64,000 bases of DNA. Origin: Macrostomum lignano (taxonomy: Eukaryota). The position numbers were made by a program, and so were the translations under genes. The stretch covers positions 930,001-994,000 of the forward strand of contig NIVC01000006.1 in assembly GCA_002269645.1 (NCBI GenBank). The letters run 5' to 3'. A model generated the notes under the pieces. That model was not told where the DNA came from and ran no database searches. It was given only the letters and a program-made list of their open reading frames with translations. Below, one piece after another: positions 43,001 through 52,000 of the stretch (position 1 is the first letter of the stretch; every line of letters starts with the position of its first letter).

Positions 43001-46000
43001 GACTCTCTGGCATCAATTCAGTGACTCTCTGGCGCTAATTCAGTGACTCTCACGCGCCAATTCAGTGGCGCCTATCCAGCAAAATCCAAACATTAGAAAC
43101 AGGCCCAGCTATCTATTGTGAGAAGAAGGAAATTGAAAAAGCAACAAATATTTGAAGCAGAGTACACAGATAAAAGCAACGAGCCACGAGGCGTCATGTG
43201 ACACCGTTTCATCCTCCAGTTTTCCTGCCCCCAGTTCCGCCTTGACAGCCGGCTTCACTTTATCGAATGCTTCTTTTAGTAAGCATTGGACTGAAGACTT
43301 CTTGCCAGCTTATCTGGATAAAACTGCTGTCTCAAAATTTCCTATTACAATAAAAATCCTTGGCTTCCACGTCTCTCACATCATCTCTCAGTCTCCTTGT
43401 AGCCTCATCATCTCCCAGTCTCCTTGTAGCCTCATCATCTCCCCAGTCTCCTTGTAGCCTCATCATCTCTCAGTCTCCTTGTAGCCTCATCATCTCCCAG
43501 TCTCCTTGTAACCTCATCATCTCACAGTCTCCTTGTAGCCTCATCATCTCACAGTCTCCTTGTAGCCTCATCATCTCTCAGTCTCCTTGTAGCCTCATCA
43601 TCTCCCCAGTCTCCTTGTAGCCTCATCATCTCTCAGTCTCCTTGTAGCCTCATTATCTCTCAGTCTACTCGTAGCTTCATCATCTCTCAGTCTCCTTGTA
43701 GCCTCATCATCTCCCAGTCCCATTGTAGCCTCATCATCTCCCAGTCTCATTGTAGCCTCATCATCTCTCAGTCTCCTTGTAGCCTCATCATCTCTCAGAC
43801 TCCTTGTAGCCCCATCGTCTCCCAGTCTCCTTGTAGTCTCATCATCTCTCAGTCTCCTTGTAGCCTCATCATCTCTCAGTCTCCTTGTAGCCTCATCATC
43901 TCTCAGTCTTCTCGTTGCCTCATCATCTCCCAGTCTCCTTGTAGCCTCATCATCTCCCAGTCCCATTGTAGCCTCATCATCTCCCAGTCTCATTGTAGCC
44001 TCATCATCTCTCAGTCTCCTTGTAGCCCCATCATCTCCCAGTCTCCTTGTAGTCTCATCATCTCTCAGTCTCCTTGTAGCCTCATCATCTCCCAGTCCCA
44101 TTGTAGTCTCATCATCTCTCAGTCTCCTTGTAGCCTCATCATCTCTCAGTCTCCTTGTAGCCTCATCATCTCTCAGTCTCTTTGTAGCCCCATCATCTCT
44201 CAGTCTCCTTGTAGTCTCATCATCTCTCAGTCTCCTTGTAGCCTCATCATCTCCCAGTCTCATTGTAGCCTCATCATCTCCCAGTCTTCTTGTAGCCTCA
44301 TCATCTCACAGTCTCATTGTAGCCTCATCATCTTCCAGTCTCATTGTAGCCTCATCATCTCCCAGTCTTCTTGTAGCCTCATCATCTCACAGTCTACTCG
44401 TAGCTTCATCATCTCTCAGTCTCCTTGTAGCCTCATCATCTCCCAGTCTCCTTGTAGCCCCATCATCTCCCAGTCTCATTGTAACCTCATCATCCATCAG
44501 TCTCCTTGTAGCCTCATCATCTCCCAGTCTACTTGTAGCCTCATCATCTCCCAGTCTACTTGTAGCTTCATCATCTCTCAGTCTCCTTATGCTCGTAGCT
44601 TCAGCTAACTGACCATGGCAATATTTTATTAGCCGGGTCTTTTCACTGTCTTCACTGTCTTTATTCTCTTTTTCTGCTAGAGTGCAGGCAGCTAGCGAGC
44701 CATGCAGAACTCAATTCTGTAGTCGGCACTGCTCAGGACCCCTCTCCTTTTCCTCCCCTTCCTTCGTCTCCGCTGGGCCCTCTACAGAGCGGTTTCTCAG
44801 ATTTCATCTCAGACCGACCAGCCCCCCCCTCACACATCAACTCAGTGAAATTTGGGCTGAAACTTTATCGGTGAATGTCTTCTGCGAGCTGTGCAGGGCC
44901 GGCCGTCTTTTAGTAATATTAGTTGGCTCGCTGTTGGAGGCAACAGCAAGCAGGCTCACGCTCACACAGGGTGTACATGGTCGAAATTCATAATTTTTAT
45001 TATTAATTATCAATGAGCCCTAAAAAAGCTGTCCTCCCTGCAGGAGTCACTAAACTTCCCCTTGAACTCCATGTCCACCTGACCGTTTCAGCGAATCCAC
45101 GAACTTGAGAGTTCATCATTTTCTGACAAGGTCAACTTTTAAGGTGCACAGAGCGGATCTTGGAGAGCCGTGTGATCTCCCCTTGCCCTCCTTTCTCTCC
45201 TTCCGTGCTTTCCCCAGTCGGTTTGTTCCCACCAAATGCAGACTCTTGCCGAGCCTTCACGGCGAGTGCTGGGGATCGATTCCCGCCCCCCCCCGAAAAC
45301 TTCCACTTGCTCAAAACTTTCCTTCGTGCCTCTGCATGCCAATCCCGTATTGACTGGCCGGGGGCAAGAAGCAAATCTCTCATGATTGCACCCCAGTGAG
45401 ATGGCCCGATTCTGTCCGGAGCCGAAGCCCGCTACTCTCCTCTGGCATCTGTCTTGATCGATTCGAAAATATTCATAATAAACAATTCATACTTCGAGGC
45501 GCCGTTTTGAACTTTGAAAGTTATTTAAAGACTGAGAGCATTACAGATGTGAAAATATTCGCGGTCTCGTGTTTTGGATTTTGGATGTGGGATTCGGGAT
45601 GTGGAGATTTGGGATGTGGGATTTGGGATGTGGAGATTTGGGATGTGGGATTTGGGATGTGGGATTTGGGATGTGGGATTTGGGATGTGGGATTTGGGAT
45701 GTGGGATTTGGGATGTGGGATTTGGGATGTGGGGATTCGGCATCTGGGGAATTGGGATGGGGAGATTTGGGATGTGAAATTAGGGAAGTGAATTTTGGGA
45801 TATGGGATTTGGGATGTGGGATTTGGGATGGGGGATTTGGAATGTGGGACTTGGGAAGTTGGATGTGAATTTTGGGATTTGGGATTTAGAATGTGGGATT
45901 TGAGATGTGGAACTTTGGATATGGGATTTAGGTTAAAGTTTTGTGAAATTAACACCGAGTAATTGTCATTCTCTATTTCCCACCGCAGATCCCAACTCAA

Positions 46001-49000: not shown

Positions 49001-52000
49001 GATCTAAGATTCCGGAAATGAGGATCAGAGATTCCGGAAACGCGGATTTGAGAATAGGCAACTGAACGGTCTAGATTGAGGAATTCTGGATTTTAGATAT
49101 GGGTATCTGGGATCTTGTAAAATGGGTATTTTCCCACGTAAAGCCGAAAGCAACCCCAACAAACACAGGTGAGATTCTGCTGGACTGCGAGGGCCAAACC
49201 ATGGAGGCAATCAGCGACCTGCTCACTGAGCGACTCGTCCACACCGGCAAGCTGTCCGAGTCCCTGCGCCCGGCCGTCGCTGAGGTGCTGCTGAAGCAGC
49301 ACAGCCACCTGTACGAGAGGAAGGCGCGCGGCGGCTCGCACCTGGGTGCCAAAATCCGCAGCTTCGCCGATATTGGCAGGAAATTTTCGTCTAAGGATTT
49401 GGAGAAAGGTGAGCGGCGACCGTGCCTTTTATCCCAGTCATCTTCATCCCAATGATACCCATCCAACGCGAATCGCTTGGAAACTGCCGACATAAGGATT
49501 AAATTGAAATCCCATTTCCCAAATCTCTCGAATCCCGAATCCCCACATCCCGAATCCCCACATCCCGAATCCCCACATCCCGAATCTCCACATCCCGAAT
49601 CCCCACATCCCAAATCTCCACATCCCGAATCCCCACATCCCGAATCCCCACATCCCGAATCCCCACATCCCGAATCCCCACATCCCGAATCCCCACATCC
49701 CGAATCCCCACATCCCGAATCCCCACATCCCGAATCCCCACATCCCGAATCTCCACATCCCGAATCCCCACATCCCGAATCCCCACATCCCGAATCCCCA
49801 CATCCCGAATCCCCACATCCCGAATCTCCACATCCCGAATCCCCACATCCCGAATCCCCACATCCCGAATCCCCACATCCCGAATCTCCACATCCCGAAT
49901 CCCCACATCCCGAATCCCCACATCCCGAATTCCCACATCCCGAATCCCCACCCACTCGCAGATGCCTCCGGTCACGCTCTGGGCAGCCGTGGCGACCTGG
50001 CCGCAGGCGAGTCCCCGGAACCTGCGGATCTGCACCACAGCGGCAGCGGGCACAAATTCGACCAGCACTTCATGAAGAAGGTGCCCCCGGGCGCTGAGAC
50101 CTCAAACATCTTGGTCGGCAGCACGGACTTTCTCGATCGCTCCCTGACGGTGTTCATCCGCCTTCGTCACGCGGTGATCCTGGGTGACATCACGGAGATC
50201 CCGGTGCCCACCAGGTTCATCTACATCCTGCTGGGGCCGCCAGGGCAGACGGCTCATTTTCACGAGATGGGGCGCAGCATGGCGACCCTCATGTCTGACG
50301 AGATCTTCCACGACGTGGCTTATCTGGCCAAGAATAAGGTTGGGATGGGATCTGCGGAGCTGAAAGGCTGCAGGATTAAGCCTTTGATGTTTTTGATGTC
50401 TTTGAACTTTTATACGCCGTGTTGACAAGTGAAATGCGATGGCTAAAACCTTTTGCCAAAAACAAAGTACACAGATAGCAGGTATAACATACTGCATAGC
50501 AACTAAATATCGCTAGATAACAACAGGTAAATGACCTTTGATAATAACCACAGTTTAATTAACCTGAAAACAGGCATATGACCCTAGTTAATAACAGGTA
50601 TATGACCCTAGATAATAAAAGGTATATGACCCAAATGTGGATAACCACAGGTATATGACCCAAGATAACCACAGGTATATGACCCAAGAATATCACAGGT
50701 GTATGACCCAAGATAACCACAGGTATATGACCCTAGATAATCACAGGTATATGACCCTAGATAATCACAGGTATAAGACCCTAGATAATCACAGGTACAT
50801 GACCCTAGATAATCACAGGTATATGACCCTAGATAATCACAGGTATAAGACCCTAGATAATCACAGGTACATGACCCTAGATAATCACAGGTATATGACC
50901 CTAGATAATCACAGGTACATGACCCTAGATAATCACAGGTATATGACCCTAGATAATCACAGGTATATGACCCTAGAGAAGCAGTCAGGTAGCCTTCATT
51001 GCCTATTAATCCACCTGGCTTACAGATAATCCGACTACAGTAACTAAAAACAACGCATTGTACTTTTATTTCAAATTTCCGGCGCACAAATTTCTATTTT
51101 TTCTTCTCTAGAAGCAATTTCTTGTACAGCCCGTGGTCCTACCCTTCCACATCCCACACTAAGCGCAGCAGAATTCTTTCAAACACAGGAAGCCAGTTCT
51201 AGCTGGGCACAGCACTCTCTTCTTTCTTTCTTTTCAAGAAATATTCGGTCGATTATCTGAAAGCGCTGTTTCGCCAAAAACAGGCAGATTATCGGGTCAA
51301 AGGGAAGGAAGGCTATGTCCAGCTGCAGCCCCAGACGTCAATGTGCATCCCTGCGCGGTGAAAGGGTGGAGGCCGGACAGACACCTGAAGAAAATGTTTG
51401 CCACTAGCTGGAGGAGTTCAAAAAATCCAAATATCTGGCGTCGCGGAAAAGCGGCGAATATTTATTGTAATTAAATTTTATTTCCACAACAGACACCTGC
51501 GCTGTAGCCATGGACAACTAAATAAAGTTCATGGATCATACATCAAGTATGTCAAGATAATCACAATTATCGAGCTTATCAAGTATCGGGCTTATCCAGT
51601 ATCGAGCATATCAAGCATCAAGCTTATCAAGTATCGAGCTTATCAAGCATCAAGCTTATCAAGTATCGAGCTTATCAAGTATCGGGCTTATCAAGTATCG
51701 GGCTTATCAAGTATTGAGCTTATCAAGTATCGAGCTTATCCAGCATTGGGCTTATCAAGCATTGGGCTTATCAAGTACCGGGCTTATCAAGTATCGGGCT
51801 TATCAAGTATCGAGCATATCAAGCATCAAGCTTATCAAGCATCGGGCTTATCAAGCATTGGGCTTATTAAGTATCAAGTAAAATGAGCAATTCCAATGTT
51901 TAGTAGTCCTTGAACCCCGCCGAGGGAATCTGGGAAAGGATACAGTGGACTCTCCATCACACTGCTCCACTGCGAATCAGAGACCGCTAGCTGTGTTCTA

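What the first reader, a model, noticed from the sequence alone, without database searches (positions are those of the whole stretch)
45575..49952. Nested pairs of reverse-complementary intronic minisatellites bracket the in-frame cassette exons 2-4 of SLC4
Seen: the intron 1 array GGGATGTGG(A)GATTT ends ~60 nt before the exon 2 acceptor. It is the reverse complement of the intron 4 array CATCCCGAATC(C/T)CCA, which starts ~110 nt after the exon 4 donor. Both carry the same GGAGAT/ATCTCC variant. Inside this pair, the intron 2 array (core CTCAGATCCTCAT) is complementary to the intron 3 array (core ATGAGGATCTGAG). The order A-ex2-B-purine tract-ex3-B'-ex4-A' is a nested giant hairpin. Exons 2, 3 and 4 are all phase 1-1 (138, 141, 240 nt; total 519 nt = 173 codons). 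Established: complementary flanking intronic repeats promote back-splicing and exon skipping, as with Alu pairs. Inference: minisatellites may do that job here, giving in-frame skipped isoforms or a 519-nt circRNA whose main frame has no stop codon.
Basis: partly seen in the sequence, partly recalled or inferred. Interest (0 to 1): 0.85.

Follow-up and report, generated by a model that had tools for sequence, protein, structure and literature searches.

The report
Inverted minisatellite pairs in flatworm SLC4 introns
In a flatworm bicarbonate-transporter gene whose introns are mostly tandem repeats, two repeat arrays each have a reverse-complement partner a few introns away; this looks like a scar of sloppy DNA repair that could, untested, make the RNA circularise or skip exons.

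Summary
Arrays A (45572-45929) and A' (49532-49951), and B (46198-46528) and B' (48431-49053), are real and homologous in inverted orientation. They lie in the stated order around exons of 138, 141 and 240 nt, all phase 1.

The gene is a genuine SLC4 Na/HCO3-type transporter from a macrostomid flatworm (best hit Macrostomum lignano, 70-84% identity). All 11 introns carry arrays, which make up 55% of intron sequence.

RNA folding supports only the outer pair. A-A' forms 321 bp at -549 kcal/mol and dominates the MFE. B instead pairs with the purine tract of its own intron, and B' folds on itself.

Three further findings point to a DNA-repair origin:
- A unique 55-nt inverted copy of the start of exon 5 is inserted into the purine array of intron 2. 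It shows microhomology and a stutter.
- Intron 3, which is mostly B', is absent in M. lignano, Schistosoma and a fish. It carries a duplicated 9-mer at its edges, so it is a lineage-specific gain.
- Each array family has a third member elsewhere in the window.

Back-splicing or exon skipping is a plausible by-product of A-A'. No transcript data could be reached, and nothing indicates selection.

The parts
37009..37225 (+). SLC4 exon 1 (ATG at 37009, 217 nt, phase-1 donor GAG|GTAAAC). Intron 1 is 37226-45988 (8763 nt) and holds 7 arrays.
   Evidence: tblastn of M. lignano P0001 residues 4-46; sequence reading; intron table
45572..45929 (+). Array A, the last array of intron 1. The unit is a 14-mer, GGGATTTGGGATGT(G), and the array is G-rich. 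The 5' part is homogeneous and the 3' part degenerate. It holds relic 15-mer A'-type units at 45589 and 45729-45745.
45989..46126 (+). Exon 2 (138 nt, phase 1-1)
46198..46528 (+). Array B in intron 2. The unit is an 18-mer, TATCCTCAGATCCTCATC. The 3' tail (46395-46528) has a 22-nt period and is the part most like the reverse complement of B'.
47304..48185 (+). Purine-rich, G4-prone array (GAGAAGGGGAGAGG)n in intron 2. It is one array split at 48025-48082 by the 55-nt insertion. It is also the predicted RNA partner of B.
   Evidence: (arrays 30/31 direct score 77, 59 nt apart)
48022..48076 (+). Inverted copy of the first 55 nt of exon 5, inserted into the purine array. It is 96% complementary, and as RNA has 1 G.U pair and 1 A.C mismatch. 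The left junction shares GGG. The right junction stutters: ACCGGAGG-CAT-ACCGGAGG.
   Evidence: (I4)
48256..48396 (+). Exon 3 (141 nt, phase 1-1). It is fused with exon 4 in the relatives examined.
48397..49168 (+). Intron 3 (772 nt, 81% array B'). It is a lineage-specific gain. GAGATTCTG occurs both 12 nt into the intron and at the start of exon 4.
   Evidence: chance of a shared 9-mer about 0.0016
48431..49053 (+). Array B'. The unit is a 22-mer, GAGATTCCGGAAATGAGGATCT, inverted relative to B and self-complementary.
49169..49408 (+). Exon 4 (240 nt, phase 1-1)
49532..49951 (+). Array A' in intron 4. The unit is a 15-mer, ATCCCGAATCCCCAC, with 28 copies at 96% identity. It has no self-structure and ends 10 nt before the exon 5 acceptor, so it must contain the branch point and polypyrimidine region of intron 4.
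49962..50338 (+). Exon 5 (377 nt). Its first 55 nt (49962-50016, encoding [18 protein letters not shown]) are the donor of the inverted copy in intron 2. GSRGDL is shared with M. lignano, so the exon copy is ancestral.
32151..32800 (+). Third member of the A family (24/25-mer GTTGGGATTTGGAATCTGGGATCA), in direct orientation to A and upstream of the gene.
6652..6930 (+). Third member of the B family (23-mer TTCCGGTCTGAGGACCTGAAGTA), in direct orientation to B'. It fills an intron of an upstream SLC1-type gene.

Best explanation
The locus is an SLC4 (SLC4A7/8/10-like Na+/HCO3-) gene of a macrostomid flatworm. Its introns consist largely of minisatellites.

Origin (DNA level, no selection needed). 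A/A' and B/B' are homologous arrays that ended up in opposite orientation through DNA processes. My proposal is that breaks or stalled forks in structure-prone arrays are repaired by copying nearby sequence in inverted orientation (template switching, TMEJ/MMBIR-like). The short copies then expand into arrays by slippage. The same 4.4 kb holds two clean footprints of such repair:
- A 55-nt inverted copy of the start of exon 5 is inserted into the G-rich purine array of intron 2.
- Intron 3 is a newly gained intron that is essentially array B', with a duplicated target sequence at its edges.

Consequence (RNA level). The outer pair can form a duplex of about 320 bp. This duplex loops out exons 2-4 and brings the exon 4 donor close to the exon 2 acceptor. 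It also buries the branch and polypyrimidine region of intron 4. By the known behaviour of reverse-complementary intronic matches, it should favour some exon 4-to-2 back-splicing or exon 2-4 skipping, as a by-product. The inner pair is not expected to form.

What is shown and what is inferred:
- Shown: array homology and orientation, the repair scars, the intron gain, and the energetics.
- Inferred: the repair pathway, the seeding of arrays by inverted copies, and any effect on splicing.
For: Context:
- Pfam gives Band_3_cyto at 1.4e-86 and HCO3_cotransp at 2.4e-63.
- The best homologue is M. lignano, at 70% (N-terminal part) and 84% (membrane domain).
- 33% of the window and 32% of the M. lignano homologous locus are arrays, against 0.3% in Schistosoma and 0% in a fish.
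- All 11 introns carry arrays, which make up 55% of intron bases.

Homology:
- A/A' is the closest complex array pair in the window.
- The two arrays share the GGAGAT variant, and A holds relic A'-type units.
- B/B' align over 7 units.
- None of the 153 array pairs in the M. lignano locus is related, with a top score of 20.

Repair footprints:
- The 55-mer splits one purine array, with GGG microhomology and an ACCGGAGG stutter.
- The exon copy of the 55-mer is ancestral, and there is no counterpart in M. lignano.
- Intron 3 is absent in three relatives and has a duplicated 9-mer, with a chance probability of about 0.0016.
- All three short-range copies (A/A', B/B' and the 55-mer) are inverted.

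RNA:
- A-A' is -549 kcal/mol with 321 bp, and pairs 251 of 358 nt of A in the MFE.

Literature:
- Reverse-complementary matches as short as 13 nt drive both back-splicing and skipping in C. elegans (PMC8330042).
- Templated insertions are known from MMBIR and TMEJ (PMC8421209, PMC7165422).
- New Daphnia introns carry direct repeats attributed to staggered double-strand breaks (PMC4202315).
Against: - No unique flanking homology accompanies A/A' or B/B', so no copying event is directly visible for the arrays themselves.
- B' is about as similar to the distant array at 6652 as it is to B. An A-like array lies 13 kb upstream. Both are therefore dispersed families, and the arrangement could come from independent insertions in random orientation.
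- Three out of three inverted copies is not significant (p = 0.125).
- TMEJ inserts are usually templated within tens of bases rather than 1.9 kb away (my knowledge).
- Long-range MFE predictions are unreliable, and co-transcriptional splicing may remove intron 1 before A' is made.
- No expression data exist.
Confidence: 0.5

Rival explanations
1. Chance arrangement of dispersed minisatellite families. A-type and B-type arrays are abundant genome-wide, perhaps carried by mobile elements. They landed independently in introns 1, 2, 3 and 4 in random orientation. The nested inverted order is then one of the configurations expected somewhere in a genome with tens of thousands of array-filled introns.
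For: - Each family has a third member in the same 64 kb, at 13 and 41 kb distance and in direct orientation.
- B' is about as close to the 6652 array as to B.
- There is no flank homology.
- 46 arrays lie in 64 kb.
- The A motif is simple. Its 30-mer even recurs in unrelated bacterial metagenome contigs.
Against: - A/A' is the most similar complex pair in the window, and shares a minor variant and relic units.
- The related pairs are the nearest neighbours in their families.
- The M. lignano locus, with the same array density, has no related pair.
- The 55-mer shows that local inverted copying does happen at this locus.
Confidence: 0.25
2. Selected RNA switch. The complementary arrays are maintained because their pairing regulates the production of an exon 2-4 circRNA or of in-frame skipped SLC4 isoforms.
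For: - The A-A' duplex is very stable and well placed.
- All enclosed exons are phase 1.
- Reverse-complementary matches promote both outcomes (PMC8330042).
Against: - A and A' have drifted apart to a 14-mer and a 15-mer, with one bulge and one G.U per unit, and show no covariation.
- The inner pair is out-competed.
- The arrangement is absent from the M. lignano homologue, whose arrays are unrelated.
- Intron 3 is recent.
- Skipping would delete the most conserved part of the cytoplasmic domain.
Confidence: 0.1
3. The 55-nt intron-2 element is an editing-site complementary sequence. It pairs with the start of exon 5 so that ADAR recodes codons there (possible H>R, S>G, D>G, E>G in [16 protein letters not shown]), or it masks the exon 5 acceptor.
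For: - The duplex is 54 bp at -131 kcal/mol and begins at the first base of exon 5. It has one A.C mismatch, a context ADAR favours (my knowledge).
- Flatworm ADAR2 edits mRNAs in planarians (PMC8797187).
Against: - The element sits as an insertion with repair scars inside a repeat array.
- It is near-perfect, like a young duplicate, rather than imperfect like conserved editing-site complementary sequences.
- It has no counterpart in M. lignano.
- Its pairing is pseudoknotted with A-A' and is not in the MFE.
- The exon boundary is only 10 nt from the end of array A', which could explain the breakpoint mechanically.
Confidence: 0.08
4. Assembly artefact: false inverted joins or collapsed repeats in a long-read assembly.
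For: Repeat-rich sequence is hard to assemble.
Against: - The partner arrays differ in unit length and consensus, and are not mirror images.
- The reading frame and splice sites of all exons are intact and co-linear with relatives.
- The 55-mer copy carries two substitutions.
Confidence: 0.02

Closest known systems
Reverse-complementary matches flanking circularised or skipped exons (inverted Alu pairs in mammals, short RCMs in C. elegans zip-2, DNAREP1 repeats at Drosophila laccase2, the long inverted repeats around mouse Sry)
   Same: Complementary sequences lie in the upstream and downstream introns, close to a canonical acceptor and donor. The across-exon helix (A-A') is stronger than any within-intron competitor.
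   Different: The arms are minisatellite arrays rather than SINEs or unique sequence, so register is degenerate and many alternative pairings exist. Arm length (about 350 nt at near-complete pairing) is at the high end. No circular or skipped RNA has been observed here.
Templated insertions from error-prone break or fork repair (polymerase-theta end joining, MMBIR; G-quadruplex-induced breaks in C. elegans)
   Same: A short stretch copied from nearby sequence interrupts a G-rich, G4-prone array. There is microhomology at one junction and a stutter duplication at the other.
   Different: The template is 1.9 kb away and inverted. The copy (55 nt) is longer than most TMEJ inserts. The pathway is inferred from scars only.
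Recently gained introns with direct repeats (Daphnia pulex neointrons; the DSB-repair model of intron gain)
   Same: Intron 3 is absent at the homologous site in three relatives. It restores the reading frame exactly when removed and carries a duplicated piece of the target (GAGATTCTG).
   Different: The body of the intron is a 28-copy minisatellite belonging to the same family, in inverted orientation, as the array in the neighbouring intron.
ADAR substrates formed by an exon and an intronic editing-site complementary sequence (for example GluA2 Q/R)
   Same: An exon-intron duplex that includes coding adenosines.
   Different: The complement is upstream, 1.9 kb away, almost perfect, not conserved, and bears insertion scars.
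Foldback transposons (long terminal inverted repeats made of tandem short repeats)
   Same: Long inverted arms are built from tandem units, with different unit types in the outer and inner domains.
   Different: Conserved host exons in the correct order lie between and inside the 'arms', so this cannot be one inserted element.

Membership tests
RCM pair flanking a circularised/skipped exon block | Reverse-complementary sequences in the two introns that flank the block | tested here: met
   A/A' gives 60 nt at 90% gapless and 321 bp in the duplex. B/B' share a 13-17-nt core in each unit.
RCM pair flanking a circularised/skipped exon block | Canonical acceptor upstream and donor downstream of the block, near the arms | tested here: met
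   AG|exon 2 lies 59 nt after A. Exon 4|GT lies 123 nt before A'.
RCM pair flanking a circularised/skipped exon block | Across-exon pairing out-competes within-intron pairing (outer pair A-A') | tested here: met
   The net gain is -475 kcal/mol. 251 of 358 nt of A pair with A' in the MFE, and A' has no self-structure.
RCM pair flanking a circularised/skipped exon block | Across-exon pairing out-competes within-intron pairing (inner pair B-B') | tested here: not met
   B pairs with the purine tract of its own intron (-241 against -188 net). B' self-folds at -220.
RCM pair flanking a circularised/skipped exon block | Back-splice or skipped junctions in RNA, lost when an arm is removed | not testable with these tools
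   No transcript data. No same-species protein or contig was found in the collections.
Templated insertion from break/fork repair | The insert copies nearby sequence and interrupts an otherwise continuous sequence | tested here: met
   48022-48076 is the reverse complement of 49962-50016 (96%). It lies between two parts of one purine array.
Templated insertion from break/fork repair | Junction microhomology or stutter; polarity from donor to copy | tested here: met
   GGG is shared at the left junction, and ACCGGAGG-CAT-ACCGGAGG lies at the right. The exon copy encodes GSRGDL, shared with M. lignano.
Newly gained spliceosomal intron (DSB-repair type) | Absent at the homologous position in relatives | tested here: met
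   A single tblastn HSP crosses the HSG|EIL junction in M. lignano L001, Schistosoma mattheei L002 and the fish L003.
Newly gained spliceosomal intron (DSB-repair type) | Direct repeat of target sequence at the intron borders | tested here: met
   GAGATTCTG lies in the intron's 5' end and at the start of exon 4. The chance probability is about 0.0016, and introns 1 and 2 share at most 4 nt.
Newly gained spliceosomal intron (DSB-repair type) | Shown to be spliced; presence/absence polymorphism | not testable with these tools
   Splicing is inferred only from GT..AG and exact restoration of the conserved reading frame.
ADAR editing-site complementary sequence | Intronic complement forming a duplex with coding sequence | tested here: met
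   54 bp at -131 kcal/mol.
ADAR editing-site complementary sequence | Conserved in related species | tested here: not met
   No inverted match to the start of exon 5 anywhere in the M. lignano locus. Divergence is large, so this is weak evidence.
ADAR editing-site complementary sequence | A-to-G differences between DNA and cDNA | not testable with these tools
   No RNA data.
Foldback transposon | One inserted element: removing it restores the host sequence, and no host exons lie inside | tested here: not met
   Exons 2, 3 and 4 lie between the arms and are co-linear with M. lignano, Schistosoma and the fish.
Introner (intron-generating mobile element) | Many copies sharing ends and body across unrelated genes | tested here: inconclusive
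   A B'-like array fills an intron of the upstream SLC1 gene, but the non-array flanks show no similarity (z below 1). The genome was not available.

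The most novel reading that the evidence does not exclude
In this flatworm lineage, introns are created and enlarged by inverted templated repair. A break in the ancestral exon 3+4 was filled with an inverted copy of the neighbouring intron's minisatellite, which created intron 3. 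The inverted array pairs left by such events then act as unusually long reverse-complementary matches. These would make the SLC4 pre-mRNA produce an exon 2-4 circle or skipped isoform, and would expose exon 5 codons to ADAR through the 55-bp duplex.
Probability: 0.12. Interest if true: 0.7.

Novelty: new variant of a known kind. Interest (0 to 1): 0.4.

Why it matters
If the outer pair works as predicted, minisatellites would join SINEs as a source of the complementary intronic arms that drive circular RNA and exon skipping. This would be in a phylum where circRNA biogenesis is largely unexplored.

Independently of RNA function, the locus offers a compact, datable record of how introns grow and arise. 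It contains a lineage-specific intron made of a minisatellite with a target duplication. Next to it lies a unique templated insertion with repair scars. Both bear on the long-standing question of how new introns are made.

If neither holds, the pattern is simply what a genome with one-third tandem arrays produces, and it warns against reading function into complementary repeats.

Tried and rejected
- The partition function of the 4.6-kb region timed out. I used the MFE, duplex and cofold energies instead.
- I searched for unique flank homology around A/A', B/B' and the third family members. None was found, so a large inverted segmental duplication and a shared mobile element are not supported.
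- Foldback transposon: rejected, because conserved host exons lie inside.
- Intron transposition by reverse splicing: rejected for B to B', because the arrays are inverted.
- cDNA-templated origin of the 55-mer: rejected, because the homology does not continue into the end of exon 4.
- A metagenome scan with a two-unit A/A' pattern found only six short (2-3 unit) GGGAT-type repeats in mostly high-GC, apparently bacterial contigs. No flatworm sequence was found.
- Rfam gave no family at gathering threshold in the 64 kb.
- Look-ups of P0029 and P0016 were not on record. No sequence file was available for the Limulus locus L004.
- Pfam on the concatenated reverse-strand frames of the mariner-like element gave no hit.
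- Two protein searches found no same-species sequence, so no transcripts or orthologous introns closer than M. lignano could be examined.

Full report
**What the locus is**

The finding lies in the 5' half of a real SLC4 gene. The joined exons 2-5 match Pfam Band_3_cyto (1.4e-86), and a downstream exon matches HCO3_cotransp (2.4e-63). Named relatives are SLC4A7, SLC4A8 and SLC4A10-type Na+-coupled bicarbonate transporters. The closest protein is from the free-living flatworm Macrostomum lignano, at 70% identity over the N-terminal part and 84% over the membrane domain. The window therefore comes from a macrostomid that is not M. lignano and is not in the searchable collections.

Exon 1 starts at ATG 37009 and ends at 37225. 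Intron 1 is therefore 8.8 kb. The gene runs to about 62.6 kb.

**Checking the observation**

- The arrays, their units, their order and their distances to the splice sites (59 and 123 nt) are as described.
- Exons 2, 3 and 4 are 138, 141 and 240 nt. All are GT..AG and phase 1. The 519-nt circle has no stop in the coding frame.
- The B core 13-mer occurs 13 times on the + strand in B, 11 times on the - strand in B', and nowhere else in the window.
- The GGAGAT variant is present in both A and A'.
- A also contains relic units of the A' type (GGGATTCGGGAT at 45589, and 45729-45745).
- The 22-nt-period tail of B, reverse-complemented, aligns to B' over seven units. The score is 105, against at most 29 for any other array.

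Both pairs are therefore homologous, not merely similar in composition.

**Background**

The window is extraordinary in a general way. It holds 46 arrays that cover 33% of the sequence. Every one of the 11 SLC4 introns carries at least one array, and 55% of intron bases are arrays.

The M. lignano homologous locus has the same density (32%) but entirely different units. The Schistosoma and fish loci have essentially none. M. lignano is reported to be 15% simple and tandem repeats genome-wide (PMC5730564).

Among the 1035 array pairs in the window, the related complex pairs are few:
- A/A' is inverted (score 71; the 99th percentile is 44).
- B/B' is inverted.
- An A-like array at 32151 is direct to A.
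- A B'-like array at 6652 is direct to B'.
- Two apparent direct pairs are single arrays split by insertions.

None of the 153 pairs in the M. lignano locus is related. Relatedness of neighbouring arrays is thus not the norm. The existence of third family members means I cannot exclude that the arrangement is a chance product of abundant families.

**RNA folding**

Outer pair:
- A-A' forms 321 base pairs (21 of them G.U) at -549 kcal/mol, against -270 +/- 12 for a shuffled partner.
- The net gain over self-folding is -475 kcal/mol, and A' has no self-structure.
- In the MFE of 45500-50100, A pairs with A' over 251 of its 358 nt.

Inner pair:
- B pairs with the purine tract of its own intron (226 nt in the MFE; net gain -241 against -188 for B-B').
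- B' folds on itself at -220 kcal/mol, because its unit contains UUCCGGAA.

The 'nested giant hairpin' is therefore an ordering of sequences, not the predicted structure.

Non-cognate G-rich/C-rich pairings are also strong (purine tract with A' -464, A with B -302), so alternatives exist.

A' ends 10 nt from the exon 5 acceptor. An A-A' helix would therefore bury the branch and polypyrimidine region of intron 4 while holding the exon 4 donor near the exon 2 acceptor. That geometry favours back-splicing or skipping in known systems, where even a 13-nt match is enough in C. elegans zip-2 (PMC8330042).

Positions 48022-48076 in intron 2 are the reverse complement of the first 55 nt of exon 5 (49962-50016). 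The match is 96%. As RNA it gives 54 bp with one G.U pair and one A.C mismatch, at -131 kcal/mol.

The copy sits exactly in the 58-nt gap between two parts of one purine array. The left junction shares GGG. The right junction reads GACCGGAGGCAT-ACCGGAGG-AGAAGG, which is a stutter.

The exon copy encodes ..GSRGDL.., which is shared with M. lignano, so the intronic copy is the derived one. M. lignano has no counterpart.

I read this as a templated insertion from break or fork repair in a G4-prone array. The array gains -235 kcal/mol when G-quadruplexes are allowed. Such insertions are known from MMBIR and polymerase-theta repair (PMC8421209, PMC7165422).

The breakpoint at the first base of exon 5 is only 10 nt from the end of A'. 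A stall at the array edge could explain that position. This last step is inference.

**Intron 3 is new**

- A single tblastn alignment crosses the exon 3/4 junction (..NSIHSG|EILLD..) in M. lignano, in Schistosoma mattheei and in a fish.
- The fish and Schistosoma share introns at other positions (query residues 55 and about 107) that both macrostomids lack.
- The intron is 772 nt, of which 81% is B'.
- Its 5' end reads GTGAG-TTTAGCA-GAGATTCTG, and exon 4 starts GTGAGATTCTG.
- A shared 9-mer in these 40-nt windows has a shuffle probability of about 0.0016. Introns 1 and 2 show at most 4 nt.

This is the footprint described for new Daphnia introns and attributed to staggered breaks (PMC4202315; PMC3020277). 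'Exon 3' and 'exon 4' are therefore a recently split constitutive exon that encodes the conserved core of the domain. They are not ancient cassettes.

**Most likely explanation**

The inverted pairs are by-products of DNA-level turnover in array-filled introns. All three short-range copies in this 4.4 kb (A/A', B/B' and the 55-mer) are inverted. Two of the structures carry repair scars.

I propose inverted template switching that seeds short copies, which then expand. A has drifted to a 14-mer with T where A' has a 15-mer with C. That gives one bulge and one wobble per unit, and there is no sign of compensatory maintenance.

The RNA consequence of A-A' (some exon 4-to-2 back-splicing or exon 2-4 skipping, possibly hyper-editing) is plausible and worth testing. 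Nothing here indicates that it is selected.

The main rival is independent insertion of dispersed families in random orientation. Only the whole genome can separate the two.

**Limits**

- No RNA data were available, and no relative closer than M. lignano.
- Long-range MFE predictions are uncertain.
- The statistics rest on one 64-kb window plus one 27-kb homologous locus.

Noticed in passing
window 48022-48076 and 49962-50016: A unique 55-nt inverted repeat (96%) lies between intron 2 and the first bases of exon 5. The intronic copy is an insertion that splits a purine array, with microhomology and a stutter duplication. Its two substitutions turn CAGGCGAGT into CAGGTGAAT on the opposite strand.
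   Followed up: yes
window 48397-49168: Intron 3 is absent at this position in M. lignano, Schistosoma mattheei and a fish, and is flanked by a duplicated GAGATTCTG. It is probably a lineage-specific intron gain whose body is a minisatellite.
   Followed up: yes
window 37226-62127: All 11 SLC4 introns contain tandem arrays, which make up 55% of intron bases. In most introns the first array starts 11-139 nt after the donor. The M. lignano homologue has the same array density with unrelated units.
   Followed up: partly
window 57840-58776: An element of about 937 bp with 35-bp terminal inverted repeats (97%) and flanking TA is inserted into a 23-mer array, splitting it into 57599-57837 and 58777-59054. 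Reverse-strand frames carry mariner-like motifs (for example [10 protein letters not shown], recognised from memory), but Pfam gave no hit. A 34-residue stretch of the M. lignano model P0169 matches 57923-58024, so that model may include transposon-derived sequence.
   Followed up: partly
window 6560-7110: An upstream gene of the SLC1 / sodium:dicarboxylate symporter family (Pfam SDF, 5.3e-11) has an intron filled by a B'-like 23-mer array. The array units resemble the intron's own 5' end (GTGAGTATTC against GAAGTATTCC).
   Followed up: partly
window 6476-6521: A short interstitial (AACCCT)n run, which is the TTAGGG-type telomeric repeat, lies just upstream of the SLC1 exon region.
   Followed up: no
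window 56579-56906 vs 9124-9433; 20886-21005 vs 16678-16800; 19784-19914 vs 14651-14787: Dispersed non-array repeats of 120-340 bp at 80-92% identity, in both orientations. They are probably transposon fragments.
   Followed up: no
window 47304-48185, 52411-53056, 62651-63107 vs 55885-56514; 4403-4978 vs 7814-8590, 17055-17481, 53594-53979: Other complementary array sets exist. Long purine (GA/G-rich) arrays in introns 2 and 5 and after the stop codon are complementary to a (CTCTC)n array in intron 8. A (CAGA)n array is complementary to several (TCTG)n arrays. Complementary intronic repeats are therefore common in this window.
   Followed up: partly
L001 12969-14672: In M. lignano, intron 4 of the homologue is filled by a 74-mer array. 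Each unit contains its own inverted repeat (CCAACCCCC ... GGGGGTTGG). Another intron holds an (ATGGG)n array, that is (GGGAT)n, the core motif of array A.
   Followed up: no
L005-L010: The exact two-unit A/A' 30-mer occurs as 2-3-unit repeats in six metagenome contigs, four of them at 51-68% GC. In two of them (L007, L008) it is followed by an inverted GGGAT-type copy, forming a hairpin-like pair.
   Followed up: no
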